From IMG/VR virus record IMGVR_UViG_3300020147_000065, positions 124,001-188,000 of that record: a stretch of 64,000 nt of DNA; one strand, 5' to 3'. Both the position numbers and the translations under genes were made by a program. Shown here piece after piece: positions 27,106 to 61,749 of this stretch. Position 1 is the first letter of the stretch. Every line of letters begins with the position of its first letter. A model generated the notes under the pieces. The model was not told where the DNA came from. It made no database searches and saw only the letters and a program-made list of their open reading frames with translations.

Positions 27106-27134
27106 TTGACTTTTTAGTAAAATTTTGCTATAAT
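27106..27134 (+). promoter_or_regulatory. Sigma70-type promoter
   Basis: TTGACT-17 nt-TATAAT with extended TG, followed by CCCCGTGG at about +1. Confidence 0.75.
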
Positions 27135-27139
27135 TCCCC

Positions 27140-27880
27140 GTGGAGAGCCAAATAATGTCCATCACAGAACTACAAGAACGTTTTTATCTGGAGAATAAAT
27201 TTCATTTCTCCCCCATGATTCACTCATGGCGAAAGAGCGAGGAAAAAGAAGCCGAGATATTCTCTCATTCTCTTGAGGGTTTATCTATGGTAAAGAATTT
27301 CGATGCTATAGAAGCATTGTTTTACGCAGACCGGTTAGCTCTTGAAGAGAAGATAATCGAGACGGCATCAGATCATAGTCTCTACGTTATCAATGATTGG
27401 GATGATAACACAATAAAGGACAAGATACTCACCCAGGAAGTAGCCCGGATTTATGCCGGTAAATATCTGATGAGTCAGCTTCGTTATTCCTTTAAAGAAG
27501 ATTTTGAATTACTACAGTCGGGAGTTCTTGATCTCAAACGACCAATTGCAAGAATCTGGGCCAGGGATATATTTTATCTACCATTTAAAGATCATGGTGA
27601 AAGTTTGAACATCCTCTGTGGAGATTATGTTCCTTATTCATTTCATGGCGATGAATACCCCGTGGTCAGACAAAAAGAAATCAAGTATATACCCAAAGGT
27701 AGCACCGAGATAAAAATTGGCCACGAAGTAGTTCTGGAAAGATGCGGTAGACTCGAACAGACATGTGATATTGCCGTGTGGCTCTGGAACACGGAACTAC
27801 ACGATCCCTCGACTCGTAAGGGGAGCCAGAAAAGAGGTTCTCTATGGCAAACGATGTTACGGAGAAAGATCGCCGTATGA
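27140..27880 (+). CDS. Hypothetical protein
   Basis: 246-aa ORF behind the strong promoter (start may be ATG 27155). Confidence 0.7.
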   Translation: MESQIMSITELQERFYLENKFHFSPMIHSWRKSEEKEAEIFSHSLEGLSMVKNFDAIEALFYADRLALEEKIIETASDHSLYVINDWDDNTIKDKILTQEVARIYAGKYLMSQLRYSFKEDFELLQSGVLDLKRPIARIWARDIFYLPFKDHGESLNILCGDYVPYSFHGDEYPVVRQKEIKYIPKGSTEIKIGHEVVLERCGRLEQTCDIAVWLWNTELHDPSTRKGSQKRGSLWQTMLRRKIAV

Positions 27881-28015
27881 AGATGGCGATTAAGACCCTG
27901 AAGAAAATCGCTGCGGGTAAGTTCGACGAACAGTACGATAATGACAGCGATAGACTTCATGCCCAGCAGAAAATGGCCAAAGCCACTCTGGAAAATATGA
28001 GGAAGGTGCAGAACT

Positions 28016-28528
28016 GTGAGTTGTGAAGCAATCGAGTATTTGGAGAGAGGTAACCCTTACGAATCCGTCATTGATTTCGGTGGACGTAAGTTTACAGGAA
28101 GAGTGCGTCTAATTAATCCTTATCATCTGGATGAAGAAGAACCTCTTAAAATTGGCGACATGGTTTACGAGAACGTCCACGATGGGAATGACGAGATACT
28201 TGTTCCTGGATTCGTGTGTGCGATTGATGGTGAACGAGTTCAGGTAGATTATTCCTCTACAATTCGCCTTCAACCCAAAGAAAGATATAGTTTTTCTCAC
28301 TATGATCCCGAAGAAGGTCATTTTATTTCTCATATCGGTCGCAATGTAGCAAAGTTTATGATAACACAGGAAGGAAAGACCAAGACTTTCTACTGCTGGG
28401 CCAGAACTTCACGAACAACCGATTACGGGGTAGATAGGGATGACAAGAAGTGGTATCGCTCACACAGGCACGTATCAAAGAAATTCATACCACCTTATTC
28501 TGCCGGACGCTGCATGATACAGTATTGA
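28016..28528 (+). CDS. SH3/KOW-like protein with an insert resembling the tail tube N-terminus
   Basis: LKIGDMVYEN...VQVDYS; insert HIGRNVAKFMITQEGKTKTFYCWARTS. Confidence 0.55.
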   Translation: MSCEAIEYLERGNPYESVIDFGGRKFTGRVRLINPYHLDEEEPLKIGDMVYENVHDGNDEILVPGFVCAIDGERVQVDYSSTIRLQPKERYSFSHYDPEEGHFISHIGRNVAKFMITQEGKTKTFYCWARTSRTTDYGVDRDDKKWYRSHRHVSKKFIPPYSAGRCMIQY

Positions 28529-28536
28529 GGTAACCA

Positions 28537-28890
28537 ATGAAAGTAGGAGACTACGTATACGAGAACATTTCAGATTATCCTAAAGGTATCATCTGTATTC
28601 AGGGAGCGGCCATCGTTGCGGCTGTGACCAATGACGGGGAGGTACTTCTTGATTTCTCGCAGGTGTTTCTTCGTCGCAACAAGGTGGGCCGAATTAAACC
28701 CTCGATCATGCAACAAGTAATGACTGATATTCTTGGTGGGCGAGAGTCAGGGATTTATAGCTTACCACGGCCAGAAGATCGCATCAGTTTAAAGGATTAT
28801 GGGTTGAATACATTCTTTAAGAAATGGCGACCGCTCAAGTACTTAAAGAAAGCAGAAGGTCGGCAGGAGATGCCTGAATATTGGAAGTAA
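28537..28890 (+). CDS. SH3/KOW-like protein, paralog of 28016-28528
   Basis: MKVGDYVYEN...VLLDFS...DYG....KKW; GAGG SD. Confidence 0.6.
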   Translation: MKVGDYVYENISDYPKGIICIQGAAIVAAVTNDGEVLLDFSQVFLRRNKVGRIKPSIMQQVMTDILGGRESGIYSLPRPEDRISLKDYGLNTFFKKWRPLKYLKKAEGRQEMPEYWK

Positions 28891-28892
28891 CG

Positions 28893-28925
28893 AAAAGCCG
28901 GAGTCCCTGAAGACTCCGGCTTTTC
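28893..28925. terminator. Bidirectional intrinsic terminator
   Basis: AAAA-GCCGGAGTC-loop-GACTCCGGC-TTTT between convergent genes. Confidence 0.85.
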
Positions 28926-28994
28926 TTATACCCATTTATATCTAAATCTGAGTATAAACGGATATAAACAGGTATAAACTACCCCGTGGTTGGC

Positions 28995-29249
28995 TTATGT
29001 CTTAATTAATTCCGCCTGTAGATTCATCTTACCCACTAAGTAAGTCTTAACATCTCCATTAGGCTCATATATCATTACATTCACAAAGTCATCTGGAGTA
29101 ATCTCGAAGATGACTCTCTGTGAACCCAGAACTTCGTGAGTAATCAGGTCTTCGTTATCAAGATGGGCCTGGAGGCCGGTAGCCTTGTTATCGTGATCGC
29201 GGTTGTGCAGTTCGAAGAGGCGCACACTTCCTCGCTGTTCAGTACTCAT
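28995..29249 (-). CDS. Hypothetical protein with own promoter
   Basis: Minus-strand TTGTAA-17-TATAAT followed 7 nt later by ATG (MSTEQRG). Confidence 0.65.
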   Translation of the reverse strand: MSTEQRGSVRLFELHNRDHDNKATGLQAHLDNEDLITHEVLGSQRVIFEITPDDFVNVMIYEPNGDVKTYLVGKMNLQAELIKT

Positions 29250-29566
29250 GTTCTCCATTATACAAAAAATCACCCGTCTTTACAAGTAGTTAATAGTGTG
29301 TATAATTAAAAATCTCGAATTGGTATTTTTTGAGAATAGTAAAATTTTAAAGAATGGGTTTCTTCTCCCTGGGAATCGGGTTTTGGGAGAGGGGTGTTTT
29401 TAGTACACGTACCATTACTTCGTAATAATACACACTAATTATAGAGCTGATTTGGGTTTTTTGGGTGTAGCATTTACTCGGTACCGGGTCCCCTCTCCAG
29501 AGAGGGACCGAAAAATAAGTAGTGGGGGGTGTGTTTATATCACAAAACACACCCCGGCACCGCGCA

Positions 29567-29776
29567 TCAATCAATCGCGTAAGTCTCGCCATCATCCATA
29601 ACACAAAAGGCAACCTGTGTCAATCCATAGCCATCGCCTCGCCATGTGTCAATGATACGACAGAAGGCATGAGCTTCGACTAAGGCCCATGCCTCATTCC
29701 ATGAGTCAACCTCACGGATAAACGTAGGGCGTTCACCATTGCAGTGATAGACAGAGAAGCGGGAAGGGTCATTCAT
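29567..29776 (-). CDS. Small hypothetical protein
   Basis: GAGG SD and TTGTGA-17-TATACT promoter with CCCGTGG in the spacer. Confidence 0.65.
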   Translation of the reverse strand: MNDPSRFSVYHCNGERPTFIREVDSWNEAWALVEAHAFCRIIDTWRGDGYGLTQVAFCVMDDGETYAID

Positions 29777-29814
29777 TGTATTACCTCACTTAGTATAGCT
29801 AACCACGGGTGCGG

Positions 29815-30027
29815 TCACAATGGAGTAACCGCGCGAATGAAGTCAGACATGGTGCCAGCATAGTCACGGGCTACACCTCGAATAATATGCAGATTAGACA
29901 TCTCTTCGATTTCTTCGGCATCCTCGAAGTATGAGCCTTCACATTCAAGCGCATGGTTGCGCATCTCGGCTACGATGGCAGGGGACAGGAACACTACAGG
30001 GGCAGGGAGGTTGGCTGAATTACGCAT
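29815..30027 (-). CDS. Small hypothetical protein (leaderless)
   Basis: TATACT 6 nt before ATG (MRNSANL). Confidence 0.55.
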   Translation of the reverse strand: MRNSANLPAPVVFLSPAIVAEMRNHALECEGSYFEDAEEIEEMSNLHIIRGVARDYAGTMSDFIRAVTPL

Positions 30028-30238
30028 ACCCATAGTATAGCACATCGCAAGTGCTATGCAATACTCTATTTATTTAAATGTTCTCTACTGTACCAACCAC
30101 GGGGCACGATCTTGACATTTGTTTGCGGGTGGGGGGGCACCTATACATAACCTGGTTTATGTACTCTATATAACATATTAATTTATTTTTTCTTCTTTAC
30201 CCCTTGCATTGCACTACTCATGCTGTCATACTTTAGGT

Positions 30239-30478
30239 ATGTTAATTGAAGCCCTCGACCGTTTAACCAGCCTGTCCCTTGCCCTTGCTACTGCCTTTTG
30301 TGTCCTCGCCTGTCATGCGTATTACCTTAATATGCCTGAGTGTGCATGGGCTAACATCAAGTTGTTTATTGTGGCCTTTGTGTGTGAGCTTGTGTTTCTC
30401 AAGCTGCATAACATGGCAGTAGTAGCATGGTGCAAGCGTGAGAACGCTATCTATGACGCTGCCCGTGCTGCTGTATAA
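30239..30478 (+). CDS. Small two-TM membrane protein (leaderless)
   Basis: TTGCAT...CATACT then ATG; two hydrophobic segments. Confidence 0.6.
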   Translation: MLIEALDRLTSLSLALATAFCVLACHAYYLNMPECAWANIKLFIVAFVCELVFLKLHNMAVVAWCKRENAIYDAARAAV

Positions 30479-30617
30479 TAAGGCCCCTGCACCTACCTTG
30501 CGGGGTAGGTGCGGGGGGGGCACCTGCTATACGATCCAAAATAATTGTTCTTTACCCCTTGCACTATTCACTATTCCTGATATACTCTAAGCATCGCTTG
30601 ATTGATAAGGAACGACG

Positions 30618-30803
30618 ATGAACAAGAAAGCAACCATCTGGGGCGCACTCCACTATGTAGTAACCGGCCCAAAGGCCGAAGAGAACGCAATAGCGTTCTA
30701 CCGTGCGCAGGGCTACACCTGCACGGGCACGGGCGCTGGCCATGTGCGGGTGTTAGAGGATGGCAAGGGGCATCGTGCCTATATGTCCCTTGAGGCCATC
30801 TAA
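30618..30803 (+). CDS. Small hypothetical protein
   Basis: Own promoter TTGCAC-17-TATACT and AAGGA SD; hairpin after the stop. Confidence 0.65.
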   Translation: MNKKATIWGALHYVVTGPKAEENAIAFYRAQGYTCTGTGAGHVRVLEDGKGHRAYMSLEAI

Positions 30804-31005
30804 CCTATACCCTGCGCACACTTGACTTTTGTGTGCGCAGGGGGGGGGGGCATCGCCTATCCTTTGTCAAGGATCACCTATGCCCTATGTGCGCTACCAT
30901 ACAATAGCTGATTTATTCTCTAAAATTCTTTATTATTACCCCTTGTATAGTAGCCCCTACCCTGAGATACTATAGTCATCACGTTGGTTAAGGAGAGTGC
31001 CTAAC

Positions 31006-31314
31006 ATGGCAAGCAAATCAGTCGTTTTAGTAGAGCGTAGCGGACACATTAGCGGTGTGCAGGGTATGTTTAAGTTGTATAAGGACGGACGCATGACGTT
31101 CGCCAGCAACCTGGTTGAAGGTGCCGACGCTTGCCGTTTGGTTATCTATGTTAAGGAAACGCCCACGATTAAAGTGGGAGAGGGCTATATGGTGCGCGGC
31201 ACGAATAGCGGCCATGCTTTGGGCAAGGCTCCGAAAATCACGTTTCCTGAGAACATTCTCCGTTTGGCGATGGCTCTTAAAGTCCAAGCCGACAAACAAG
31301 CGGAGGCCGCATGA
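31006..31314 (+). CDS. Paralog family A protein, copy 1
   Basis: Shares GHI, EG, TPTIxxGxGY, GxxL..xxKxxFP with 32339 and 35292; AAGGAG SD. Confidence 0.7.
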   Translation: MASKSVVLVERSGHISGVQGMFKLYKDGRMTFASNLVEGADACRLVIYVKETPTIKVGEGYMVRGTNSGHALGKAPKITFPENILRLAMALKVQADKQAEAA

Positions 31315-31680
31315 TTTTTGTCCTCGCTTTTCTTTTACTAATTTGCTGCCCCGCTTTTGCGGGGCAGCCTGAAAAGTTCTGGGCAGCTATCGGCCTACTT
31401 AGTGTAGTCTGTTTTATAGTGACCTAACATAATCCGGCCTACTTGTCAAGTTAAAAGAAAAGACTTGACAAGTAGGCGCGGCGGGGGTGGGCAGATTACA
31501 ACTTTTGTCAACCCGGTGCCGGCCTTCTCAACGCTAACCCTTTAGTTTAACGCGCCCAAACAAAAAGTCAAGCAACCCTGTCAAGGGATCGCGCATAAAT
31601 TATTTTTCAGCCTGGCCCTTGCATCAATCCCCGTGGTTAGTTAAACTATTGTTATCACAATTCGGTTTTAGGAGATTTCA

Positions 31681-31881
31681 ATGCAAGACGATTCTGTAGT
31701 TTTACCCGCCGTTGTTACCCCGCCCGTCAATCCGCACCTGAAGGGCAAAGATTGGGTTTGGGCGTGGGTGCCCAGCGTGTGGGGCGCGGGTGGCTATACA
31801 CGCTCCATGTTGCGCACGGAGGCGCAAGCGCACGGCTTTGAGTTCACGGAGCCGCGTGAGGGGCAAGAGCCACGCTATTAG
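31681..31881 (+). CDS. Small hypothetical protein
   Basis: AGGAG SD; promoter with CCCCGTGG spacer. Confidence 0.65.
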   Translation: MQDDSVVLPAVVTPPVNPHLKGKDWVWAWVPSVWGAGGYTRSMLRTEAQAHGFEFTEPREGQEPRY

Positions 31882-32115
31882 CAGCTTAGCAATTCTCACA
31901 CTTGTTGTTATAGTGTGAGAACTGCCCCCCCCCCACCGCCAGCAGTTTGTAACAGCCACAAACTGATCGCGGTGGGGGAATTGTTCGCCGGCAAACATTT
32001 GCTCTGATCGCGCCTTGACATTCTGGGGTTGGTTTGGTAGGGGCCGGCATCGCGCAAAAATAATCCTTGTATGATCGTCGCGTTGTGATATACTAAGGGT
32101 AATCAGGAGGTTTCA

Positions 32116-32265
32116 ATGACTCAGAAGCACAACCCGCCGCGCGTCGTAAAGTGCGACCATTGCGGCAAACTCACGAAGCACAACCCCGTTGCATGGCAAC
32201 AACTGTGCGACAAATGCGAGGAGAAATTTGACCGCCGTCGTGCCTACAAAAACGGTTACGAGTAA
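32116..32265 (+). CDS. 49-aa zinc-finger peptide (not in ORF track)
   Basis: MTQKHNPPRVVKCDHCGK...LCDKCEE; AGGAGG SD and own promoter. Confidence 0.7.
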   Translation: MTQKHNPPRVVKCDHCGKLTKHNPVAWQQLCDKCEEKFDRRRAYKNGYE

Positions 32266-32338
32266 GGGAAAGGGGACTTGCGCCCCTTTCCTCACCCTGT
32301 TAAACTACTGTTGTTAGTTAATTTTTGGAGGTTATCCC

Positions 32339-32641
32339 ATGTCACTGTTTGAGAATCCAGTCACCGGACACATCAGCCACCCAACTGCCGGGCGCGTCGC
32401 CGTCGAGTTTGACCTACATAAAGAAAAAGACCGCGTTGTTTTGCGGTCTATTGAGGGTGAGGCTGGCGAGTGCTTTGGAGTTATTTATCTTCGCAAAACT
32501 CCAACCATCGAAATTGGACAGGGTTATTTGACTTTCAAGGGGCGCAGCGGTCATGATTTACAGGGCACCAAAAAAGTCACTTTTCCTACTCCAATAGTGG
32601 AACTGGCGAAAAAGGTGCAAGAGAGACAGGCCGCCGCGTGA
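32339..32641 (+). CDS. Paralog family A protein, copy 2
   Basis: MSLFENPVTGHI...RVAVEF...RSIEGEA; GGAGG SD. Confidence 0.75.
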   Translation: MSLFENPVTGHISHPTAGRVAVEFDLHKEKDRVVLRSIEGEAGECFGVIYLRKTPTIEIGQGYLTFKGRSGHDLQGTKKVTFPTPIVELAKKVQERQAAA

Positions 32642-32784
32642 TACTAATCGGCCTATTCCTTTTCATTGTGGCTCCCGCTTTTTATAAGCGGGAGCCAGTT
32701 TATATCGCAATTTGGGCGGTATATGTTGCACTGATAAATTGGCTCTGATATACTCAGAGAGTTGTTAAATTCTGGAGGTTTTCC

Positions 32785-33021
32785 ATGTTATTTCCACCCA
32801 TAGAACCGCAGGACGTTCCGAGCTTTGCCGAGATTTTTTCCGATGTATTGAACGCGCAGCCGGAGGGCGATGATTTGGAAGCGTGTGACGAATGGTTAAG
32901 CTGCAACGACGGCGAATGGCCGCGCAGTGTCGAAGAGTTGCGGGAATGGTGGACAGCCGAACCAGAGCCGGAATATCAGAGCGCGACCCTTGATCCTGAT
33001 TACGATGAAACTCTGAGCTGA
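32785..33021 (+). CDS. Highly acidic small protein
   Basis: 78 aa rich in D/E/W; GGAGG SD; canonical U-tailed terminator follows. Confidence 0.7.
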   Translation: MLFPPIEPQDVPSFAEIFSDVLNAQPEGDDLEACDEWLSCNDGEWPRSVEELREWWTAEPEPEYQSATLDPDYDETLS

Positions 33022-33277
33022 TATAACGGGCACTGCCAACGCGGTGCCCGTTTTTCTTTGCGCGACCATGCCGGCGAGTGTGCGCTATCTTACATAGTGG
33101 GCAGCTTGCACTTGACGTTGTGTGCAAGCTGCCCACCCCCACCACGCAGCAGAAAACAACCCTGCTGCGTGGTGATCTGTTCCCTGGCGAACATTTATTA
33201 TTTATACCCTTGCACTTGCTATTGTGGCCTGATATACTGCTATGCAGTTGTTAAATTAAGCCATCCACGGAGATATT

Positions 33278-33490
33278 ATGTTAGCCTACACAATGACCGA
33301 CGAGACGACCTACACAGTGACCCGCAACGGTTCACCCGTTGGCACAATTCGCCTTGACGGTGCCTTCTATAGCGCCTATGGTGTGCGCGATAATTTTCTT
33401 GGTTCCAGCAGCCGGAGCCTCGGAATTGAGAACGCGGTGCGTAATCAATTTGGCACCCGTCGCCCAAAGTGGGGCAGACGCGGACACTAA
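33278..33490 (+). CDS. Small hypothetical protein
   Basis: GGAG SD and TTGCAC...TATACT promoter. Confidence 0.6.
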   Translation: MLAYTMTDETTYTVTRNGSPVGTIRLDGAFYSAYGVRDNFLGSSSRSLGIENAVRNQFGTRRPKWGRRGH

Positions 33491-33567
33491 AAATATTTCG
33501 GGCGCGACCTTGCACAGAGGTTGCGCCCCTGTTATACTATTGGTATAACCAATCAGGGAGAACGAAA

Positions 33568-33690
33568 ATGTCCGACGGAAAAACGATCATCGAAGAAATT
33601 GACGAAATCGAAGAATTGGCAGCGATGGCCGACGAACACGACGCGCAAAACGAGTTCCACGATCAATTTGATGGACAGTGGAAAGTCTAA
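33568..33690 (+). CDS. 40-aa acidic peptide
   Basis: MSDGKTIIEEIDEIEELAAMADEHD...; GGGAG SD and own promoter. Confidence 0.65.
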   Translation: MSDGKTIIEEIDEIEELAAMADEHDAQNEFHDQFDGQWKV

Positions 33691-33826
33691 CAAAACGGGC
33701 CGGCCCCTACGGGGAGCCGGCCCTCACTTTATCTGCCCCCCCCCCACTCATAAAATTTTCCATAAATTACTTGTATTTATATTCTGTTATGTTATACTTT
33801 CAGTATCACAATTAGGAGGTAGCAAA

Positions 33827-34006
33827 ATGCTACTCGATTTATGGCCTTACTTAGTGGCCTCTTTTCCAATGACTGATATGCGGAATCGCATTGCACGTCA
33901 AATAATGAAAAGGGCGATGCAACCAAAGGGTCTGGATGGCACAGTGTGGGGAACACTGACAGACAAATATGTTGATAAGTCGTTCGATAGCAACGCCCGG
34001 TATTAA
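33827..34006 (+). CDS. Small hypothetical protein
   Basis: AGGAGG SD; TTGTAT-17-TATACT promoter. Confidence 0.6.
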   Translation: MLLDLWPYLVASFPMTDMRNRIARQIMKRAMQPKGLDGTVWGTLTDKYVDKSFDSNARY

Positions 34007-34212
34007 ACCGGGCGTTGTTGGTTTGTTTGCCCCCCCCACTCAAATTTAAGAAAATCTGCCCACCCCCGTGTTAATTTCTTCCCCTTTCGCTGCGCTATAA
34101 TGGAAGAAGGAAAGTCAGGGAACTGGGTCAAAAATAAAAATAAATTTGACTTTCATTTGTCCCCGTGGTCTGCTATACTAATGTTAATTCTTTTAGGAGT
34201 GAGTTTATCACC

Positions 34213-34713: not shown

Positions 34714-34817
34714 CACCACGCCTCACACCGCAAGGTGTGAGGTGCCCCCCCCCCACGCTTGCCATTTTATTTTGTTTGTGTCATACTATAGTTATCTTGA
34801 TTGATGAGGTTAGTGAA

Positions 34818-54290: not shown

Positions 54291-54375
54291 GCCCCGGCTC
54301 CCTTCGGGGAGCTTTGCCCCCCCTTGCGCACAGCTCTAATCTTCTGTATAATTATTAGTAATAAGGAGGCCAACG

Positions 54376-54645
54376 ATGCCTAAATCAATGTTTCGTCCAT
54401 CGGATGTAATGGACAACGCGCATTTCAATGACCACACTAAGGTCTTGACTGTGACGTTTCAGAGTGGTTCGGTTTACGAGTATGAGAATGTGCCTGAGCG
54501 CGTTTTCAATCGTTTAAACGCCGCTCCTTCTAAGGGACAGTTCTTTAATCAGAACATCCGTAATAAATACGCATTTAAGTGTGTGTTTAAACCCGCTAAG
54601 ACAACTACAGCGCCGCAGGTTCAGCCCGTGGCTGTCACTGTCTAA
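54376..54645 (+). CDS. KTSC domain protein
   Basis: LTVTFQSGSVYEYENVPERVFNRLNAAPSKGQFFNQNIRNKY; AAGGAGG SD. Confidence 0.9.
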   Translation: MPKSMFRPSDVMDNAHFNDHTKVLTVTFQSGSVYEYENVPERVFNRLNAAPSKGQFFNQNIRNKYAFKCVFKPAKTTTAPQVQPVAVTV

Positions 54646-54742
54646 TGTTCCTCCTTACCGGGAAACGGAGGCTTCCGGGCCTCCGTTTCTTCGGTCTGCC
54701 CCCCCCTTGTCACAAGTAAATTAAAACGATATAATCTATTAC

Positions 54743-55159
54743 ATGAGTGAAACAAACAACGTGAACATTGCTGAACTGAGCCTGAACCAAATTGCATTCT
54801 TAAAGCTCGGCCTCAAAGAAGGCGACACCGTAAAGGTTGTTGCTAAAGTGCCAGAAGGCACACACGGTTCTGATATTTACTGGGAAACGAGTATGACCCG
54901 TAAAATCGGTAAAACCCAACGAGTAGTAGGTGCGCGGAACCATAGCCGAATCGAACTCGAAGATGGGTATTACTACCCTGCCCTCGCGCTGGAAAAAGTG
55001 AAAGTTGTCAAGGAAATTCGGCTCCCTGACTACACCGCTTTAGTCAGCGAAGATGGTGTATCCGTGGGTTGCCAAAACCTCACCAAAGAAATGGTGTTGG
55101 GTATCGTAAAAGCCGCAGTGGAAACGAACTTCATTTCACAGGAGGACTTGGAGTTCTAA
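54743..55159 (+). CDS. Paralog family C protein, copy 2
   Basis: Family C motifs. Confidence 0.85.
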   Translation: MSETNNVNIAELSLNQIAFLKLGLKEGDTVKVVAKVPEGTHGSDIYWETSMTRKIGKTQRVVGARNHSRIELEDGYYYPALALEKVKVVKEIRLPDYTALVSEDGVSVGCQNLTKEMVLGIVKAAVETNFISQEDLEF

Positions 55160-55233
55160 GCCGGGAGCCGTCGAAAGACGGCGACCTGCCCCCCCCCTTG
55201 TCACTACTCAAGAATAACAGTAAAATATATTCC

Positions 55234-55653
55234 ATGAGTGATAAAGTAAAGACAATGAATGATGTGGCTTTCGAGTTTCTCAATGAGAAATTCAAAGTTG
55301 GCGACAAAGTGCGAGTCACCATGCGGGTTGACTCTGGTGTGCAGGGTAATCGAATTGACTGGCTTGAGGGAATGGAAGAGGCTCTCAATTCGGGACTTCA
55401 CACTATTCTGGATACCAACGAGTCGTATGGTGCGTTCCGACTGAGTTGTGGTTACTGGTTCCCGGCGTTGGCAATCAGCTCTGATGTTGGTAAAGTCACT
55501 GTCAAACTGCCCGACTACACAGCCGAAATCACCAAAGAAAAAGTCAACGTAGGTTGTCAAGTTCTGACAAAAGAGATGATTCTCAGTATCGTAAAGGCCG
55601 CAGTGGACACCGGCTTTTTAAATGAGGAGGATATTGCCTCACTTAAAGGTTAA
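55234..55653 (+). CDS. Paralog family C protein, copy 3
   Basis: Family C motifs; leaderless MSDKVK. Confidence 0.85.
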   Translation: MSDKVKTMNDVAFEFLNEKFKVGDKVRVTMRVDSGVQGNRIDWLEGMEEALNSGLHTILDTNESYGAFRLSCGYWFPALAISSDVGKVTVKLPDYTAEITKEKVNVGCQVLTKEMILSIVKAAVDTGFLNEEDIASLKG

Positions 55654-55732
55654 GCGGCGGGGAGCTGCCTTCAGGCAGCGACCTCTTGCCCCCCCCTTGC
55701 ACTAACCAACTAAAAACGATAGAATATATTCC

Positions 55733-56158
55733 ATGAGTGATACAACAGCAAAGACGGTTAATGATGCAGCGTTTGAGATTCTCAGCGCAACGGTCAAAGA
55801 AGGCAGCAAGGTTCGCGTAATTCTTCGTATCCCAAAAGGTATGCATGGAAGCCGCATCTCATGGGTTGACTCGATGGACGGAAACGTGGGCGTCGGTATC
55901 CACACTGTAACCGATGTAAGCCCTCGCTACGGTGCTTTCGAGTTGGACAACGAAAAGTGGTATCCTGCGGTTGCTCTTTCGGCGGACGCGGAAACCGTTC
56001 GCGTCGCGCTCCCTGACTACGAAGCAGAAATTACCAAAGATGGTATCGTAGTCGCGGGGCAGAACCTCACCAAAGAGATGGTTCTCGGCATCGTGCAGGG
56101 TGCGCTCGACACCGGATTCCTTGATAAAGGAGATGTAGCCACTATTAAGACTTCCTAA
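55733..56158 (+). CDS. Paralog family C protein, copy 4
   Basis: Family C motifs. Confidence 0.85.
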   Translation: MSDTTAKTVNDAAFEILSATVKEGSKVRVILRIPKGMHGSRISWVDSMDGNVGVGIHTVTDVSPRYGAFELDNEKWYPAVALSADAETVRVALPDYEAEITKDGIVVAGQNLTKEMVLGIVQGALDTGFLDKGDVATIKTS

Positions 56159-56238
56159 GCAACGGGGAGCCATCCACGGGTGGCGACCTTTTGCCCCCCC
56201 CCTTGCACCAAAATAAGATAAGCGGTATAATTTATTAC

Positions 56239-56676
56239 ATGAGCGATACACAAACAACCCCCGAACTGACCGTGAACCAAGCCGCATTTAATGTTTTAAA
56301 TGCGAAAGTGACCGAAGGCGACAAGATTCGCGTCGTCCTCAAAGTGCCTATTACCGTGCATGGTAGTGATGTGAACTGGGTCGAAGAGATGGACAACACC
56401 ATCAACAAAACGCTTCGCGTTCGCCGCGTTGACGCAAGCAATGGTTCTTTCTATCTCAGCAACGGCTACTGGTATCCTGCCGTGGCACTCTCCACCGAAG
56501 TAGCAAAAATCACCGTGCCGCTGCCGGATTACACGGCGGAAATCACCAAAGAACAGGTCAACGTCGGCTGCCAGATTTTGACCAAAGAAATGATTCTCGG
56601 CATCGTGCAAGGCGCGTTGGATGTAGGGTTTCTGAGCGAAGAGGATGTGAACCGCCTCGACACCAGAGAAGTATAA
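56239..56676 (+). CDS. Paralog family C protein, copy 5
   Basis: Family C motifs; leaderless MSDTQT. Confidence 0.85.
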   Translation: MSDTQTTPELTVNQAAFNVLNAKVTEGDKIRVVLKVPITVHGSDVNWVEEMDNTINKTLRVRRVDASNGSFYLSNGYWYPAVALSTEVAKITVPLPDYTAEITKEQVNVGCQILTKEMILGIVQGALDVGFLSEEDVNRLDTREV

Positions 56677-56750
56677 CCGGGTGGACTCTTCGGAGTCCAC
56701 CCTGCCCCCCCCCCTTGCGCTGATAGAATTTAAACAGTATAATTTATTCC

Positions 56751-57167
56751 ATGAGTGAAACAAGAAAGACGGTTAATGACGCGGCGTTTGAAATCCTCAA
56801 CGCACAGTTGAACATTGGTGATAGAGTTCGTATTGTCGCCAAAATTGATGAGGGTGTCCACGGCAGCAAGACTGTTTGGACATCTCGCATGAATGATAGT
56901 GTGGGTCAGTTTATGACTATTCGCGGTGTTGAACCTGAGTATGGTGCTTTTCAGTTGGATAACTATTACTGGTATCCTGCCGTGGCACTCGATACTCAGG
57001 TGCATAAAGTGACGGTTAATCTGCCGGATTATTGCGCTGAAATCACCAAAGAAGGGGTGAACGTGGGTTGTCAGAACCTCACCAAAGAAATGATTCTGCA
57101 AATCGTGCAGGGCGCGTTAGACGTGGGTTTTCTCGATGCCGAGGACATCGAAAGTCTGAAAGTATAA
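56751..57167 (+). CDS. Paralog family C protein, copy 6
   Basis: Family C motifs. Confidence 0.85.
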   Translation: MSETRKTVNDAAFEILNAQLNIGDRVRIVAKIDEGVHGSKTVWTSRMNDSVGQFMTIRGVEPEYGAFQLDNYYWYPAVALDTQVHKVTVNLPDYCAEITKEGVNVGCQNLTKEMILQIVQGALDVGFLDAEDIESLKV

Positions 57168-57244
57168 GCGGCGGGGAGCTATCGAAAGATAGCGACCTTG
57201 CCCCCCCCTTGGCAACACTCAATATAAACAGTAAAATATAAGAC

Positions 57245-57643
57245 ATGAACATGAACCAAGCAGCATTCGAGACGTTGAAGGAAACGCGCGGCATCGGTGA
57301 CAAAGTGAAGGTTGTCCTGCAAGTGGACAAAGGTGTGCATGGAAACCTCTTCCGTTGGGATTCCGGTATGACCGAACAAATCGGAAAAGTCTTGACAATC
57401 AAAGAGTTCGATTCTTCGGACAACACCATCCTGCTGTCAGATAGCCGTTATTATCCCGCACTCGCTTTGATGAGCGACAACGGCCCCATTATCGTGGAAT
57501 TGCCCGATTACAAGGCAGAAATCCACGCTGACCGTGTGCAAGTTGGTTGTCAGTGCCTCACCAAACAGATGGTGTTGGACATCGTGAAGGGTGCAGTATC
57601 TGTCGGGTTTATGAGCGAATCAGATTTGGAGGGTCTGCGATAA
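57245..57643 (+). CDS. Paralog family C protein, copy 7
   Basis: Family C motifs. Confidence 0.85.
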   Translation: MNMNQAAFETLKETRGIGDKVKVVLQVDKGVHGNLFRWDSGMTEQIGKVLTIKEFDSSDNTILLSDSRYYPALALMSDNGPIIVELPDYKAEIHADRVQVGCQCLTKQMVLDIVKGAVSVGFMSESDLEGLR

Positions 57644-57720
57644 GCCCCCGCGGACTCTTCGGAGTCCGCCTTGCCCCCCCCCCTTGCACAAGGTTCAAAT
57701 TAAGGGGTATAATTTATTCC

Positions 57721-58137
57721 ATGAGCAAACAAAAGACGTTACACGACATTGCATTTGAAGAACTGGGCATCGAAGAGGGCGACTTCGCTAAAGTCGTCCT
57801 TAAAGTGGACGAAGACGTTCACGGTAACCCGCTCCGTTGGTCGCATGGTATGGAAGAAATGTTAGGTAAGACATTTCGCGTCACCAACATTGATACCAGC
57901 GACAACACAATCGAACTGAACAACGGCGAATGGTTCTCGGCTATTTCGCTCGAAAAGGCAACCGGCGAAATCAAGGTGCAATTACCGGATTACACCGCAG
58001 TCGTAACCAAAGAAGGCATGGAAGTTGGTTGCCAGAAACTCGACAAAGACAAGGTTTTGGAAATCGTTCAGGCTGCAATCACCACCGGTATGATTGACCG
58101 CGATGATGTCGAAGACCTCGACTATCACGACGACTAA
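57721..58137 (+). CDS. Paralog family C protein, copy 8
   Basis: Family C motifs; leaderless MSKQKT. Confidence 0.85.
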   Translation: MSKQKTLHDIAFEELGIEEGDFAKVVLKVDEDVHGNPLRWSHGMEEMLGKTFRVTNIDTSDNTIELNNGEWFSAISLEKATGEIKVQLPDYTAVVTKEGMEVGCQKLDKDKVLEIVQAAITTGMIDRDDVEDLDYHDD

Positions 58138-58212
58138 GCGGGGTGCTGCCTTCGGGCAGCACTCTTGCCCCCCCCCCTTGCCTTGTCCCCGTGGTTGGGT
58201 TATCCTTTACAT

Positions 58213-58506
58213 ATGTCCGACGAATATCCTTTAACAGTTAAACAAGTAAACAAACTCATGGATGATGTTTTCAATACTGAGCCGCCAGAGCTTGTTCTTG
58301 CTCGTAAACTTAAAGAAGCCGGTTTTACTGAGCATCAAGTATGGAGAATGTTTATTGCTCGTAATGATGAGCCGAAACCTTATGCCCCACACTTTGCAAG
58401 CTATATAAGTTCAAATGAAGCAATTCGTTTGAGAGTTTATAATTTTTTTCGTGACTTCGAACGTGGTGGAGTGTGTCGGCGGATAGATACCGGATTAATC
58501 AGTTAA
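58213..58506 (+). CDS. Cassette gene, hypothetical (leaderless)
   Basis: TTGCCT-CCCCGTGG spacer-TATCCT then ATG. Confidence 0.65.
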   Translation: MSDEYPLTVKQVNKLMDDVFNTEPPELVLARKLKEAGFTEHQVWRMFIARNDEPKPYAPHFASYISSNEAIRLRVYNFFRDFERGGVCRRIDTGLIS

Positions 58507-58559
58507 TCCGGTTGCCCCCCCCCCTTGCATCGGTTAAATCTCTGAGTTATCCTTTATAT

Positions 58560-59069
58560 ATGATAACCGAACGCATCAACCATTCAGATATTGATTCTCG
58601 CCATGCTAACGACTTCATTAACGCATGGTATAATGAAGTTGCCAAACGCGGCGAAATTTACGCCACAAACGCTGAAATTTTAGCGAAAGAAACCGCACTC
58701 GATTTGTTGTCAAAGGGTGCCGGTGAAATTGTTTACGGGCGCAAAAAGGACGATTTGTTGCGCGTTAACGATAAGGGTTTAATTCCCGAAAACAAAAAGT
58801 TGTTTTTTAAAGCCGTTGTCGGCTATGCTTATTTGTGGGGTATTGCTCTTAGTGTTGAAATATCGGAGCAGCTACCCACGGGCGCTAAAATCGAATATAT
58901 TGCCGATGACCTATGCCCCCATAAAGACCGGCAAGTGACGCAAGAATTTCAATGGAAATATCGCAAGCGTAGCGACGATGAAGAAATCGAAAAAGAGGCC
59001 GAAGCCGACACACAAGACGAAGAAACGGCAGAAGTCGAACCCTGCCCCGCTGGGGAGGTGATCGAATAG
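58560..59069 (+). CDS. Cassette gene, hypothetical with acidic tail
   Basis: Leaderless MITERIN. Confidence 0.7.
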   Translation: MITERINHSDIDSRHANDFINAWYNEVAKRGEIYATNAEILAKETALDLLSKGAGEIVYGRKKDDLLRVNDKGLIPENKKLFFKAVVGYAYLWGIALSVEISEQLPTGAKIEYIADDLCPHKDRQVTQEFQWKYRKRSDDEEIEKEAEADTQDEETAEVEPCPAGEVIE

Positions 59070-59122
59070 GGCGATTGCCCCCCCCCTTGGCAACTCATGA
59101 AAAAGGGAGTAAAATATTTAAC

Positions 59123-59401
59123 ATGAATCAAGAACATCAACAAATCGTTGTTTCTGCCGCTGAAAAACTCAATAAAATGGCGGGTATTGTTGGTGCAAGC
59201 ACCATCCCATTTCATCCTGCACTCAATGAAGATGAAGTGAACGACATTCTCAATGAGGCTCAAGCGTTCGGCTTGACTGCCGAACGCACTGATTTTCTGA
59301 ATGACCACGAGGGTCAGGACTTCACCAACATCACCTTTGAACTCGCCAACCGGCAGGGTGCCCATATGCTGGATGCTCTGCGTGGAGCCTCTCCTGTATA
59401 A
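59123..59401 (+). CDS. Cassette gene, hypothetical
   Basis: Leaderless MNQEHQQ. Confidence 0.7.
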   Translation: MNQEHQQIVVSAAEKLNKMAGIVGASTIPFHPALNEDEVNDILNEAQAFGLTAERTDFLNDHEGQDFTNITFELANRQGAHMLDALRGASPV

Positions 59402-59455
59402 GGAGAGTTTGCCCCCCCCTTGTAATACTCATAGAAATTGCGTATAATTTATTAC

Positions 59456-59638
59456 ATGACAAGCAACGGAATCATGAATCAGTTGGGCAAGTGCTACCGC
59501 GCCGTTTTCAATGGCAACGACAATTCTGCAACGTGGGCGAAAATTCATCGCCTCACCCGCCGTCACGAACGGGCGCTCGAAAAAGAGGCCGAGTCTGCGG
59601 AGCCTCAAATCGAGGGAGCAGCCGAAGTAGACAATTAG
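59456..59638 (+). CDS. Small cassette gene
   Basis: TATAAT then leaderless MTSNGI. Confidence 0.6.
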   Translation: MTSNGIMNQLGKCYRAVFNGNDNSATWAKIHRLTRRHERALEKEAESAEPQIEGAAEVDN

Positions 59639-59742
59639 TTGCTCTCTTGCTCATGCACCTCCGGCCACTACCTCAGTTTCGACTGGGGTAGTGTGCTGCC
59701 CCCCCCTTGTTCTATATTTGTTTGCTTGATATAATTATTATC

Positions 59743-60543
59743 ATGCTCTTAGAAAAAGAACAACCAAAACCAAAACCAAAGAAAAAGGTGCCGTCAAACT
59801 GTTATGAAGTTGTCATAACGGCCAACCACGGGGACGCAGACCATAGCGAAGAGAGAACAATTCGTATCCCTGACAGCCGCGAAGACCTCCTGAAGATGCT
59901 CTTGCATGACATTGATGTAACAGAGCGTTATTATTCACATGACAATTTTGAAGAATCACCGTTTATGCGGAAATGGTGTGAAGACGGCGACGACGAATCT
60001 ATCGTCAATGAATGTCGAGAAATCAGCTTTACAGATTGGCCGCGCGACATCACTGCCGACCGGCAATTCCCCTGCACATTCTATTTTGGCCCTGATGTTT
60101 ATTATTATGATGAACAGGGTGAGCGTTTACACGTTACTGTAACTTATTCTGACGAAGAAAAAGCGACAGAAGAAGAGCGGTTAAAAGGGACGTGGGAAAA
60201 AACAAAGGCCGCAGTTATCGCAGAAGAAAAGGCCGAACGTGCCAATAAATCAGAGCAGAGATGCGCGGTTTGTGGGCAAACTCAGTGGTCGTATGGTGGG
60301 CCGCGCAAAACCTGTTCGAGTTGCGGTAGTGAACTGCTTTACACTCAGCGTCTTTTTGATGCTGACGGCGAAACGATTACTGATAATGACAATCCTTATC
60401 AGTCAATCGAAGACCTCCGCACTAAAATTCTGCCGGAATTGGATAAGTTGCGCGAAAACGACAATTCTCGCTATTTTCAGCGGTGGTGGTTCATAAACCG
60501 AAAAGTTGAGAACCACGACAAAGGTTTACCGGAAGACGCTTAG
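59743..60543 (+). CDS. Hypothetical protein with zinc ribbon
   Basis: CAVCG...CSSCG; leaderless MLLEKEQ. Confidence 0.75.
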   Translation: MLLEKEQPKPKPKKKVPSNCYEVVITANHGDADHSEERTIRIPDSREDLLKMLLHDIDVTERYYSHDNFEESPFMRKWCEDGDDESIVNECREISFTDWPRDITADRQFPCTFYFGPDVYYYDEQGERLHVTVTYSDEEKATEEERLKGTWEKTKAAVIAEEKAERANKSEQRCAVCGQTQWSYGGPRKTCSSCGSELLYTQRLFDADGETITDNDNPYQSIEDLRTKILPELDKLRENDNSRYFQRWWFINRKVENHDKGLPEDA

Positions 60544-60601
60544 GCGTCTTCCTTGCCCCCCCCCTTGCGAACTTTCCCCGTGGTTGGTTAAAATCTATAA
60601 C

Positions 60602-61258
60602 ATGAATCGAGATTACCCACCGGCACCATATCGTTGCGAAATTGTTTGTTCTGATGATTTGCGCGTATCTGCTGAACTTGATAAAACTACAATCAATATC
60701 AGCTATCGTTTACATCACATCGCAACATATGAAAATGGGAGCCGTGATTTTTCTTTTATTCGCCGTGTGCCTACAATCGGTGAATTTATTGATATTATCC
60801 ACGAATACCCTTGCGAGTTACGAGATGATATTAACGACGGAAAACTCGCATCTCATGTGTTAGGTGGAATCTTTATATTTGAGAATCCACAAACTAAAGA
60901 TTCTTTTGTATCATTCGCTCCCCTCAATGCCGAGACACTATATGAGCAAACAGCTAATGCTGTTCATTATGCTTCATTTGGTAGTGTAATTGAAGGTGAA
61001 GCTAATCGCGCATGGCGAGATAAGTTTGTGCAAGTAGCTGTCCTCGATCATAACGGCAACGGTTATAGCGTGTTAAGTAATAATCCTTTAGTTCCCGATG
61101 TTTGGTTTAATTCGGTTCGCCGCCGAACATTAAATCGCGCTGAGGCCGAAGAGCGTGTTCGCCGCATCTGTGCTGATAATCGTGATGTAGTTGTGCGCTG
61201 GTGCCCAACTAATAACCTGCCACCGGACTGGTGTAATGAGCGCACGAAGATTATATAA
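60602..61258 (+). CDS. Cassette gene, hypothetical
   Basis: TTGCGA-CCCCGTGG spacer-TAAAAT then MNRDYPP. Confidence 0.75.
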   Translation: MNRDYPPAPYRCEIVCSDDLRVSAELDKTTINISYRLHHIATYENGSRDFSFIRRVPTIGEFIDIIHEYPCELRDDINDGKLASHVLGGIFIFENPQTKDSFVSFAPLNAETLYEQTANAVHYASFGSVIEGEANRAWRDKFVQVAVLDHNGNGYSVLSNNPLVPDVWFNSVRRRTLNRAEAEERVRRICADNRDVVVRWCPTNNLPPDWCNERTKII

Positions 61259-61327
61259 TCTTCGTGTTGCCCCCCCCCTTGCACCACCTAAACAACGGAG
61301 TTAAAATCTTTAGTGAAAGGAACAGAC

Positions 61328-61528
61328 ATGGCATCTGACATCACCAAAGAACAAAAACGGGCATATCGGCAAATGGGGCGCGAAGATGGACGCGCAGGGC
61401 GTTCCGCCTCAGAGTTCCACAACACACCACACGAATTGGTTCAAGCGTATAACTCCGGTCATAAATCCGGTAAACGCACACTGGAAAACGAAAAGGCACA
61501 GCGCGACTATGAATTAAGCAAGTGGTAA
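61328..61528 (+). CDS. Small hypothetical protein
   Basis: AAGGA SD; AYxxGxxDG/AYxxG motifs. Confidence 0.6.
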   Translation: MASDITKEQKRAYRQMGREDGRAGRSASEFHNTPHELVQAYNSGHKSGKRTLENEKAQRDYELSKW

Positions 61529-61749
61529 CGCCTTGACAGCACCTCTTAAACCTGTTATAATAAGAGTATGATATTCTTATGGGTAGGGGTGCTTTTCTTG
61601 GCTCCATTGTTTTGCATGGGGAATAAGACTGCCCTCGGTGTAATTTACGGTGCATTTGCCTTGTGGTTATTGTATAATGGAGTATGCTAACCACGGGGCA
61701 GGTGCCCCCCCCCCTTGATTAATGTAAAACAATTGATTAAAATAAAAGT

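What the first reader, a model, noticed from the sequence alone, without database searches (positions are those of the whole stretch)
27134..61700. Second motif CCCCGTGG(TT) inside the -35/-10 spacer of a subset of promoters: candidate operator regulon
Seen: in spacers at about 29805(-), 31629, 34161, 36747, 37420, 42724, 44292, 47283, 51335(-), 52773, 53147, 53805(-), 58187 and 60576, always reading CCCGTGG in the direction of transcription, and at +1 of the 27106 promoter. It also occurs in genes and other intergenic sites (17773, 28982, 39793, 61691). Known: spacer operators and asymmetric dispersed repressor sites (mycobacteriophage stoperators). Inference: a phage regulator or DNA modification controls a sub-class of cassettes; the wHTH (61750) and ParB-like (25814) proteins are candidates.
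Basis: partly seen in the sequence, partly recalled or inferred. Interest (0 to 1): 0.68.

Follow-up and report, generated by a model that had tools for sequence, protein, structure and literature searches.

The report
Genome-wide 12-bp phage recognition site
The CCCCGTGG word is real, but it is the core of a longer one-directional 12-base signal scattered about 130-170 times over the whole 221-kb genome of an uncultivated giant phage, only a fifth of the copies lying in promoters, so it looks like the docking site of one unknown DNA-reading factor with a genome-wide job, not just a switch for a few genes.

Summary
Observation confirmed and enlarged. CCCCGTGG occurs 26 times in the window (1.3 expected) and every coordinate given is right. 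The true motif is asymmetric and about 12 bp, (C)CCCGTGG-N-T-R-G-C. The window is part of a 221,108-bp virus record holding 138 CCCGTGG (about 14-15 expected) and 128 CCCGTGGNNNG (3 expected). About four in five copies lie inside ORFs, in all three frames and on either strand. In portal and terminase they were made partly by Glu/Asp/Lys-to-Arg changes, so selection acts on the DNA. Orientation alternates along the genome (94 of 137 neighbours, p<1e-5). Same-orientation copies avoid each other within about 1 kb (18 against 43 expected); opposite-orientation copies do not. About 25-30 copies sit in sigma-70-type promoters, forward with one exception, at three RNAP-occluding places: the spacer next to the -10, over the -35, and at +1. 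Four relatives lack the motif. No DNA methylase, TGT or RecB/AddA-like gene was detected. Best reading (0.45): the site of one unidentified sequence-specific factor, operator-like in promoters and with an orientation-dependent genome-wide role.

The parts
29798..29809 (-). motif copy in the spacer of a minus-strand promoter
   Evidence: TTG at 17 bp, -10 TATACT starts 12 nt after the motif start
31630..31641 (+). motif copy in a promoter spacer (no poly-C)
   Evidence: -35 TTGCAT, -10 TAAACT at +12
34162..34173 (+). motif copy abutting an extended -10
   Evidence: TGc-TATACT at +12; no TTG at 16-18 bp
36748..36759 (+). motif copy in a poly-C promoter spacer
   Evidence: C10-TTG, -10 TAAAAT at +12, ATG 6 nt later
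37421..37432 (+). motif copy in a poly-C promoter spacer
   Evidence: -10 TATACT at +12; the gene has a leader with a Shine-Dalgarno site
42725..42736 (+). motif copy in a poly-C promoter spacer
   Evidence: C10-TTGACG, -10 TAAAAT at +11, leaderless ATG
44293..44304 (+). motif copy in a poly-C promoter spacer
   Evidence: C9-TTGTGA, -10 TAAAAT at +11
47284..47295 (+). motif copy in a poly-C promoter spacer, upstream register
   Evidence: C8-TTGTTC, -10 TATAAT at +16
51327..51338 (-). motif copy overlapping the -35 hexamer of a minus-strand promoter
   Evidence: TTGCCC overlaps the motif start; -10 TATACT at +19
52773..52784 (+). motif copy overlapping the -35 hexamer of a poly-C promoter
   Evidence: C8-TTGCCCGTGG; -10 TAGAAT at +20
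53148..53159 (+). motif copy in a poly-C promoter spacer
   Evidence: C8-TTGACT, -10 TAAAAT at +12, leaderless ATG
53796..53807 (-). motif copy in the spacer of a minus-strand promoter that shares its G/C tract with the plus-strand promoter at 53820
   Evidence: -35 TTGACT, -10 TATACT at +14
58188..58199 (+). motif copy in a poly-C promoter spacer
   Evidence: C10-TTGCCT, -10 TATCCT at +13
60577..60588 (+). motif copy in a poly-C promoter spacer
   Evidence: C9-TTGCGA, -10 TAAAAT at +12
61686..61697 (-). motif copy upstream of the minus-strand ORF 61341-61694, back to back with the poly-C promoter of the 61750 gene
   Evidence: followed by CATACT; promoter status uncertain
30092..30103 (-). 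intergenic copy followed by TACAGT; possible weak minus-strand promoter
27137..27148 (+). motif copy over the start site of the 27106 promoter
   Evidence: TTGACT-N17-TATAAT ends 2 nt before CCCCGTGG
28983..28994 (+). intergenic copy just after a -10-like hexamer
   Evidence: same kind of placement as 27137
41513..41524 (+). intergenic copy 3 nt after TAAAAT, downstream of a C10 tract that has no TTG
39789..39800 (-). intergenic copy, minus orientation
56169..56180 (-). intergenic copy between a hairpin and the next poly-C promoter, pointing against transcription
2886..26863 (.). ten ORF-internal copies in the late (structural) genes; CCCGTGG core leftmost bases 2891-, 4301+, 7011-, 7254+, 17774-, 21084+, 21702-, 22968+, 23327-, 26857-
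   Evidence: orientation alternates almost perfectly; frames vary; portal and terminase copies were made partly by Arg substitutions
27659..59832 (.). nine ORF-internal copies in the early cassette region; CCCGTGG core leftmost bases 27659+, 34865-, 38831+, 42414-, 44720-, 52462-, 54625+, 58876-, 59826-
   Evidence: six of the nine point against the gene
61750..62187 (+).
   Evidence: no Pfam or PHROG hit; Atlas look-alikes are HTH_24/HTH_5/MarR over residues 52-136, TM 0.45-0.5; the AF2 model is unusable, pLDDT 40
25814..26470 (-).
   Evidence: PHROG ParB-like/nuclease hits, E 1e-11 to 1e-12; no Pfam hit

Best explanation
CCCCGTGG is the core of a lineage-specific, asymmetric recognition site of about 12 bp (up to 14 bp), (c)(C)CCCGTGG-N-T-R-G-C. 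It is read on duplex or unwound DNA by one sequence-specific factor, most likely a phage-encoded protein that binds as a monomer with two reading heads, one for the 7-bp block and one for T-R-G-C. The site is kept at about 130-170 places over the whole genome by selection on the DNA itself. About 25-30 copies are built, pointing with transcription, into sigma-70-type promoters at places where a bound protein excludes RNA polymerase: the spacer from about -26/-24 to -13, over the -35, or over +1. There they would act as operators for a sub-class of promoters. The other roughly 100 copies, inside ORFs on either strand, serve a second function that depends on orientation and acts over about a kilobase, because a copy is dispensable when another copy of the same orientation lies within about 1 kb. 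SHOWN: the motif and its extension; the enrichment; frame and strand independence; the amino-acid cost; alternation and same-orientation spacing; the three promoter placements and the forward bias; absence from relatives. INFERRED: that a protein reads it; that it is phage-encoded; repression at promoters; the nature of the genome-wide function.
For: Enrichment is 128 against 3 expected for CCCGTGGNNNG, with strict positions CCGTGG and G(+10). The 120 non-promoter copies keep the T-R-G-C extension, so the extension is not a by-product of the extended -10. Copies fall in all frames and in both orientations relative to genes. Copies in portal and terminase arose by synonymous changes plus Glu/Asp/Lys-to-Arg replacements relative to relatives (portal: three; terminase: one). 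Orientation alternates in 94 of 137 neighbour pairs (p<1e-5), and in 59 of 82 outside the early region. Same-orientation pairs within 1 kb number 18 against 42.8 expected (p=1.6e-5), while opposite-orientation pairs are at expectation. Promoter copies: 17 strict plus about 10 looser, forward, mostly 12 or 14 nt before the -10 hexamer. -10 hexamers are also enriched just upstream of the motif. A compatibility model built from motif-free spacers explains only about 7-fold of the roughly 23:1 forward bias. Motif-bearing and motif-free promoters look alike in their -35 and -10 hexamers on inspection of the lists, so the motif appears to be an add-on. Precedent: the L5-type repressor binds as a monomer to more than 20 asymmetric 13-mers, using two domains, at promoters and elsewhere (PMC9283540). 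The motif is absent from 45 kb of four relatives, as expected for a fast-evolving protein-site pair.
Against: No reader protein was identified. wHTH proteins usually bind palindromes as dimers. An operator role does not need 100 ORF-internal copies. Orientation of the ORF-internal copies ignores the direction of transcription (48 same, 63 opposite), unlike stoperators. Promoter copies use several registers 1-2 bp apart, which argues against a precise contact with polymerase. Part of the forward bias can come from the fit between the T-R-G of the motif and the extended -10. No expression, binding or methylome data could be obtained.
Confidence: 0.45

Rival explanations
1. A Chi-like 'self' signal. 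The motif would be read on one strand by a translocating helicase-nuclease of the RecBCD/AddAB type, probably the host's. The enzyme stops degrading when it meets a correctly oriented copy, so the phage would keep a copy every few kb in each orientation. Promoter copies would simply sit where 12 bp are cheapest.
For: The orientation-specific redundancy (same-orientation copies depleted within about 1-1.5 kb, opposite ones not) is what a polar, distance-acting signal predicts. Copies are independent of genes and frames. The information content, roughly 18-20 bits summed from the logo, compares with about 16 bits for an 8-nt Chi (my estimate). The phage has RecA-like and RuvB-like genes and a resolvase-like endonuclease.
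Against: None of 401 sampled genomes from the phylum of a Brevibacillus genome, nor 4 other genomes, shows any enrichment; the highest count, 16, is a local tandem repeat. The host is unknown, however. Known Chi sites are 5-8 contiguous nt without a 3-nt gap (background knowledge). No UvrD-type helicase or PDDEXK_1 nuclease gene was detected in the phage. The strong forward, register-limited placement in promoters is left unexplained.
Confidence: 0.15
2. A priming or initiation signal. One of the two phage Prim-Pol enzymes would need this sequence on the template to start synthesis, so both strands must carry it at intervals about the length of an Okazaki fragment. Promoter copies would use the open complex as an entry point.
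For: The phage encodes two Prim-Pol proteins and a DnaB-type helicase, and no DnaG-type primase turned up among the proteins scanned (not specifically searched). One Prim-Pol carries two winged-helix domains and lies next to the DNA polymerase gene. Mean spacing per strand is 3.0-3.6 kb and more regular than random. Precedent: primer synthesis by the Prim-Pol of phage NrS-1 depends on an 8-nt template sequence that is present once on each strand (PMC7102993).
Against: The recognition helix of the C-terminal wHTH domain is invariant in homologues that are only 44-50% identical, while relatives of that divergence lack the motif. Gaps of 11-14 kb per strand exist. Primases normally read 3 nt (background knowledge). 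There is no biochemical evidence.
Confidence: 0.1
3. A target of site-specific DNA modification, with the modification state tuning promoters and protecting the DNA.
For: The motif is short, asymmetric and partly bipartite, as are the targets of some modification enzymes. The phage carries unusual enzymes, including a PARP-like ADP-ribosyltransferase, a glycosyltransferase-methyltransferase fusion and a ThyX-like protein.
Against: No hit to PF01555, PF00145, PF02384, PF05869 or PF01702. Modification targets are not normally over-represented 10- to 40-fold, built by amino-acid changes, or spaced by orientation.
Confidence: 0.08
4. A promoter-only operator regulon, as first proposed, with the ORF-internal copies being noise or decayed promoters.
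For: The density is highest in promoters, and the copies there are forward and occlude polymerase. A few ORF-internal copies are followed by TAAAAT.
Against: 120 non-promoter copies keep the full extended consensus against about 3 expected by chance. They were created inside conserved structural genes and obey a spacing rule.
Confidence: 0.07

Closest known systems
Operator/stoperator sites of Cluster A mycobacteriophages (L5 gp71-type immunity repressor)
   Same: An asymmetric 12-13-bp site; dozens of copies over the genome, about one per 1.5-2 kb; copies both in promoters and elsewhere; direction matters at promoters. The two-part site fits a monomer with two DNA-binding domains (PMC9283540).
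   Different: Here about 80% of copies are inside ORFs and their orientation is unrelated to transcription. Copies alternate in orientation. No repressor homologue was identified. The genome is a 221-kb phage with about 90 early promoter cassettes and shows no evidence of temperate life.
Chi sites (RecBCD/AddAB crossover hotspot instigators)
   Same: Polar, over-represented, independent of genes and frames, and acting at a distance, so that nearby copies of the same orientation are redundant.
   Different: Chi is 5-8 contiguous nt, belongs to the host genome and is skewed with replication (background knowledge). Here the motif is 12 bp with a gap, no host signal was found in the genomes sampled, and copies are concentrated in promoters.
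DNA uptake sequences (USS/DUS) of Pasteurellaceae and Neisseriaceae
   Same: Words of 9-12 bp, about one per kb, in both orientations, inside genes in all frames, and reported to be spaced more evenly than random (recalled from the literature, not checked here).
   Different: Those are host genome features tied to competence. Here the motif is in a lytic-looking phage, is not found in sampled bacterial genomes, and has a direction-bound promoter subset.
Template recognition sequence of phage NrS-1 Prim-Pol
   Same: A phage Prim-Pol whose primer synthesis depends on a long (8-nt) sequence that is present on both strands (PMC7102993).
   Different: NrS-1 has two copies, at a presumed origin. Here there are 130-170 dispersed copies, and nothing shows that either Prim-Pol depends on the motif.

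Membership tests
Stoperator/operator system (Cluster A mycobacteriophage type) | Asymmetric 13-bp site in many copies across the genome | tested here: met
   12-bp (up to 14-bp) asymmetric site with 128-174 copies
Stoperator/operator system (Cluster A mycobacteriophage type) | Orientation of the sites follows the direction of transcription | tested here: not met
   Met for promoter copies (about 23 forward, 1 reverse), but ORF-internal copies are 48 same and 63 opposite; in the all-minus late region 10 same and 9 opposite
Stoperator/operator system (Cluster A mycobacteriophage type) | Sites lie in promoters and short intergenic spaces | tested here: not met
   111 of 138 copies lie inside called ORFs
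Stoperator/operator system (Cluster A mycobacteriophage type) | A monomeric two-domain immunity repressor is encoded | not tested
   No homologue was sought by profile; the early ORFs scanned gave no Pfam hit
Chi site | Over-represented and strand-skewed in the host chromosome | tested here: inconclusive
   No enrichment in the 401 sampled genomes plus 4 others; the host is unknown
Chi site | Short contiguous word (5-8 nt) read by RecBCD/AddAB | tested here: not met
   The motif has 8-9 specified positions spread over 12 bp with a 3-nt degenerate stretch; enzyme recognition cannot be tested here
Restriction-modification or other modification target | A cognate modifying enzyme is encoded | tested here: not met
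   No hit to PF01555, PF00145, PF02384, PF05869 or PF01702 in the 221-kb record; novel enzymes are not excluded
Classical spacer operator of a dimeric repressor | Dyad-symmetric site between -35 and -10 | tested here: not met
   The position requirement is met, but the site has no dyad symmetry
Primase/Prim-Pol template recognition site | Primer synthesis depends on the sequence | not testable with these tools
   Prim-Pol genes are present; the wHTH helix is conserved in homologues of the same divergence as relatives that lack the motif, which argues against the fused one
Sigma-factor promoter element (phage ECF-type sigma) | A fixed partner element upstream or downstream, and orientation with the genes | tested here: not met
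   No conserved positions outside -2 to +11; orientation is unrelated to genes

The most novel reading that the evidence does not exclude
The motif is a phage-autonomous, orientation-dependent 'coverage' signal written into both strands of a viral genome. It could be an obligatory start signal of 11-12 nt for a sequence-dependent Prim-Pol primase, making the copies hard-wired Okazaki or initiation sites, or a private Chi-like signal for a tracking enzyme. The same factor would double as a promoter operator. Such a signal would be a kind of genome-wide polar signal not described for phages as far as I know.
Probability: 0.2. Interest if true: 0.85.

Novelty: new variant of a known kind. Interest (0 to 1): 0.62.

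Why it matters
If one factor reads about 150 direction-specific sites in a 221-kb phage, the phage has evolved a private genome-wide address system. Those sites were installed at the price of amino-acid changes in capsid-assembly genes and are spaced by orientation. Systems of this kind are otherwise known for bacterial chromosomes (Chi, KOPS, uptake sequences) or, in a transcription-bound form, for Cluster A mycobacteriophages. It also shows that promoter-motif scans limited to intergenic DNA can mistake a genome-wide signal for a regulon.

Tried and rejected
Chance: rejected. Peptide-level or RNA-level signal: rejected, because copies fall in all frames and both orientations. Remnant of a mobile element or repeat: rejected, because the flanks are not conserved. 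Promoter for the late genes or for the phage sigma factor: rejected. Nick site: unlikely, because opposite-strand copies occur 38-67 bp apart at chance frequency. Close named relatives: none by megablast; MCP tblastn gave only 25%-identical actinophage capsids. The IMG/VR peptide scan found nothing. IMG/VR and JGI metagenome scans for the poly-C-TTG...CCCGTGG architecture returned only this genome and chance hits; L037 and L038 are homopolymer-rich contigs that lack the poly-C-TTG...-10 promoter layout. Host assignment failed: PAS-SpoIIE and DnaB homologues are only about 30% identical and point weakly to Bacillales. The single-sequence AF2 model of the 61750 protein was unusable. Two literature searches on the bare motif returned only primer hits. 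An apparent candidate relative-specific word, CCCGATGA in L019, looks like a coding-strand (peptide-level) bias and lacks any extended consensus. The convergent pair inside the Prim-Pol gene is not a clean origin candidate, because one copy lacks the extended consensus.

Full report
WHAT THE WINDOW IS. The window is bases 124001-188000 of a single 221,108-bp IMG/VR virus record. The same contig appears in the JGI metagenome collection as Ga0196976_1000013. Its two ends overlap by about 186 bp apart from a one-base difference in a poly-C tract, so the record is probably a closed genome. It is a tailed phage. It has a major head protein, a portal and a 915-aa terminase, giant tail proteins and collagen-like fibres. 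It also encodes DnaB, RecA, a RuvB-like ATPase, a class II RNR, a ThyX-like protein, a ligase, two Prim-Pol proteins, a DNA polymerase and an ECF-type sigma factor, plus about 36 tRNA genes. No named phage is close to it.

THE OBSERVATION. CCCCGTGG occurs 26 times in the window against 1.27 expected, and CCCGTGG 40 times against 5.5. In the genome, CCCGTGG (138 copies, about 15 expected under a second-order Markov model) is the second most over-represented 7-mer, after the poly-C promoter word.

THE MOTIF IS LONGER AND GENOME-WIDE. Aligning the 138 copies shows conserved bases downstream: T at +8 in 87 copies, a purine at +9 in 103, G at +10 in 128 and C at +11 in 80. C is also favoured at -1 and -2. 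CCCGTGGNNNG occurs 128 times against 3 expected. Positions CCGTGG and G(+10) tolerate almost no change, while the first C is sometimes A or T. NCCGTGGNNNG occurs 174 times, against 26 for the pattern read backwards. The 120 copies that are not in promoters keep the same extension, so it is not borrowed from the extended -10. Of the 138 copies, 111 lie inside called ORFs: 48 in the sense of the gene and 63 against it, spread over all three frames. In the late region, where every gene is on the minus strand, 10 copies point one way and 9 the other. The signal is therefore in the DNA, not in a peptide or a transcript.

THE DNA SIGNAL IS SELECTED. I aligned portal and terminase with their homologues in relatives whose capsid proteins are 61-66% identical (portal against three relatives, terminase against one). 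The copies arose through synonymous changes together with Glu, Asp or Lys to Arg replacements. Those relatives, 45 kb in four loci, hold one CCCGTGG, no extended copy and no poly-C tract. The same region of this phage holds eight copies.

A SPACING RULE. Neighbouring copies differ in orientation in 94 of 137 cases (permutation p<1e-5). The result holds without the early region (59 of 82) and without the promoter copies (80 of 120, p=2e-5). The cause is a shortage of same-orientation neighbours: none within 130 bp (5.6 expected), 2 within 300 bp (12.8 expected) and 18 within 1 kb (42.8 expected, p=1.6e-5). Opposite-orientation pairs occur at the random rate at all distances, some only 38-67 bp apart. 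Spacing per strand is more regular than random (CV 0.68 and 0.84 against 0.98 in simulations, the second not significant on its own at p=0.10), although gaps of 11-14 kb remain. The simplest reading is that a copy adds little when a copy of the same orientation is near. That is the mark of a polar process acting over about a kilobase.

THE PROMOTER SUBSET. The genome has about 90 cassettes built as hairpin, TG, C(7-11), TTG, 16-18 bp, -10 hexamer. In 58 of 75 of the cassettes with a scorable -10, an ATG follows the -10 by 6-7 nt, which makes the genes leaderless. A second class of roughly 50 near-consensus TTGACA-N17-TATAAT promoters has no poly-C. The motif sits in the spacer of 17 promoters by strict criteria and about 23 by looser ones. 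All of these point forward, with the motif start mostly 12 or 14 nt before the -10 hexamer. In that register the G at +10 often coincides with the G of the extended -10. Two copies overlap the -35 hexamer (window 51327 minus, 52773 plus), and three or more lie just after a -10 hexamer, over the start site (27137, 28983, 41513). One reversed spacer copy exists, at genome 207799. Even at the genome's own motif density only about 0.3 spacer copies would be expected. A strong -10 after the motif is seen in 22 of 137 copies against about 4 expected (p=2e-10). A compatibility score derived from 108 motif-free spacers favours the forward register at -26 by about 2.8 bits. That explains part of the forward bias but not all of it. 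Promoters with and without the motif look alike in their -35 and -10 hexamers on inspection of the lists, and have similar shares of leaderless genes. The motif there is an addition placed where a bound protein would exclude RNA polymerase, so an operator-like role is the natural inference, though it is untested.

WHO READS IT. This was not resolved. No DNA methyltransferase of four Pfam families, no TGT enzyme and no UvrD-type helicase or PDDEXK_1 nuclease was detected. The Prim-Pol protein at genome 96238-97722 has two winged-helix domains and lies beside the polymerase gene, which made it attractive. However, its recognition helix is invariant in homologues only 44-50% identical, while relatives of that divergence lack the motif. 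The ParB-like protein is supported by PHROG alone. A host-borne reader of the Chi or uptake-sequence kind was tested as far as possible. In 401 sampled genomes from the phylum of a Brevibacillus genome and in 4 others, the extended motif is no more frequent than its backward control. The host is unknown, so that result is not decisive.

COMPARISON WITH KNOWN SYSTEMS. The nearest described system is the operator/stoperator network of Cluster A mycobacteriophages. There, a monomeric two-domain repressor binds more than twenty asymmetric 13-mers in promoters and intergenic spaces, and the direction of each site is bound to transcription (PMC9283540). This phage shares the asymmetry, the copy density and the promoter use. 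It fails two defining features: site location (mostly ORFs here) and transcription-bound orientation. Chi, KOPS and uptake sequences share the polar, frame-blind, genome-wide character but belong to cellular chromosomes. The Prim-Pol of phage NrS-1 shows that a phage primase-polymerase can depend on a long template word present once per strand (PMC7102993).

VERDICT. The 'operator regulon' reading is partly supported: it fits about a fifth of the copies and cannot be the whole story. I rate the single-reader, dual-role explanation at 0.45. The rivals are Chi-like 0.15, priming signal 0.10, modification 0.08 and promoter-only 0.07. No read data, binding data or host genome were available, and the decisive experiments are listed separately.

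Noticed in passing
window 30131-63394 and genome 3083-220983: About 90 cassettes built as hairpin, TG, C(7-11), TTG(C), 16-18 bp, -10 hexamer. In 58 of 75 of the cassettes with a scorable -10, an ATG lies 6-7 nt after the -10, so most early genes look leaderless. The hairpins lack a T-run. The poly-C word is the most over-represented word in the genome.
   Followed up: partly
genome 4400-216726, e.g. window 61533: A second class of roughly 50 near-consensus TTGACA-N17-TATAAT promoters has no poly-C. Many of their spacers share a GGAA...G pattern or near-misses of the motif (CCCGTGAAAAG, CCCCGCGG, CCCCGGGG), which suggests families of duplicated promoters.
   Followed up: no
L017:7874-19887 and L018:311-9555 (genome about 195.4-216.6 kb): About 36 tRNA genes, including two with anticodons CTA and TCA that would read TAG and TGA. 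ORF coverage under table 11 is 92%, so no general recoding is evident.
   Followed up: no
genome 1-186 and 220923-221108: The record's ends repeat each other apart from a C11 versus C10 tract. The genome is therefore probably complete (circular assembly or terminal redundancy), and the poly-C length may vary in the population.
   Followed up: partly
L011:15515-16033 (-), genome 35515-36033: A phage-encoded ECF-type sigma factor of 172 aa with regions 2 and 4. Its promoters were not identified.
   Followed up: partly
L012:8992-9987 (-), L012:12959-14530 (+), L018:6682-7995 (+): An Apyc1-like (anti-Pycsar) metallo-beta-lactamase-fold protein, a PAS-PAS-SpoIIE/PP2C phosphatase, and a PARP-like protein with catalytic and regulatory domains. 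These are unusual cargo for a phage.
   Followed up: no
L019:3207-6992: In the relative, the terminase large subunit is 1261 aa and carries intein and LAGLIDADG signals. The relative's DNA polymerase region (61-kb contig) is interrupted by GIY-YIG and LAGLIDADG genes. The phage studied here lacks these insertions.
   Followed up: no
L037, L038 (Ga0179593 contigs): Metagenome contigs with 16-30 poly-C tracts of 7-14 bases per 5-10 kb, nearly all on one strand. They have no similarity to this phage and lack the poly-C-TTG...-10 promoter layout. Their nature is unknown; they may be a sequencing artefact or another element rich in homopolymers.
   Followed up: partly
genome 7899/7955, 61434/61472, 84204/84271, 96330/96393, 204007/204056: Five pairs of copies 38-67 bp apart, all convergent and none divergent. 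Three of them lie within the first quarter of a gene. The numbers are too small for significance.
   Followed up: partly
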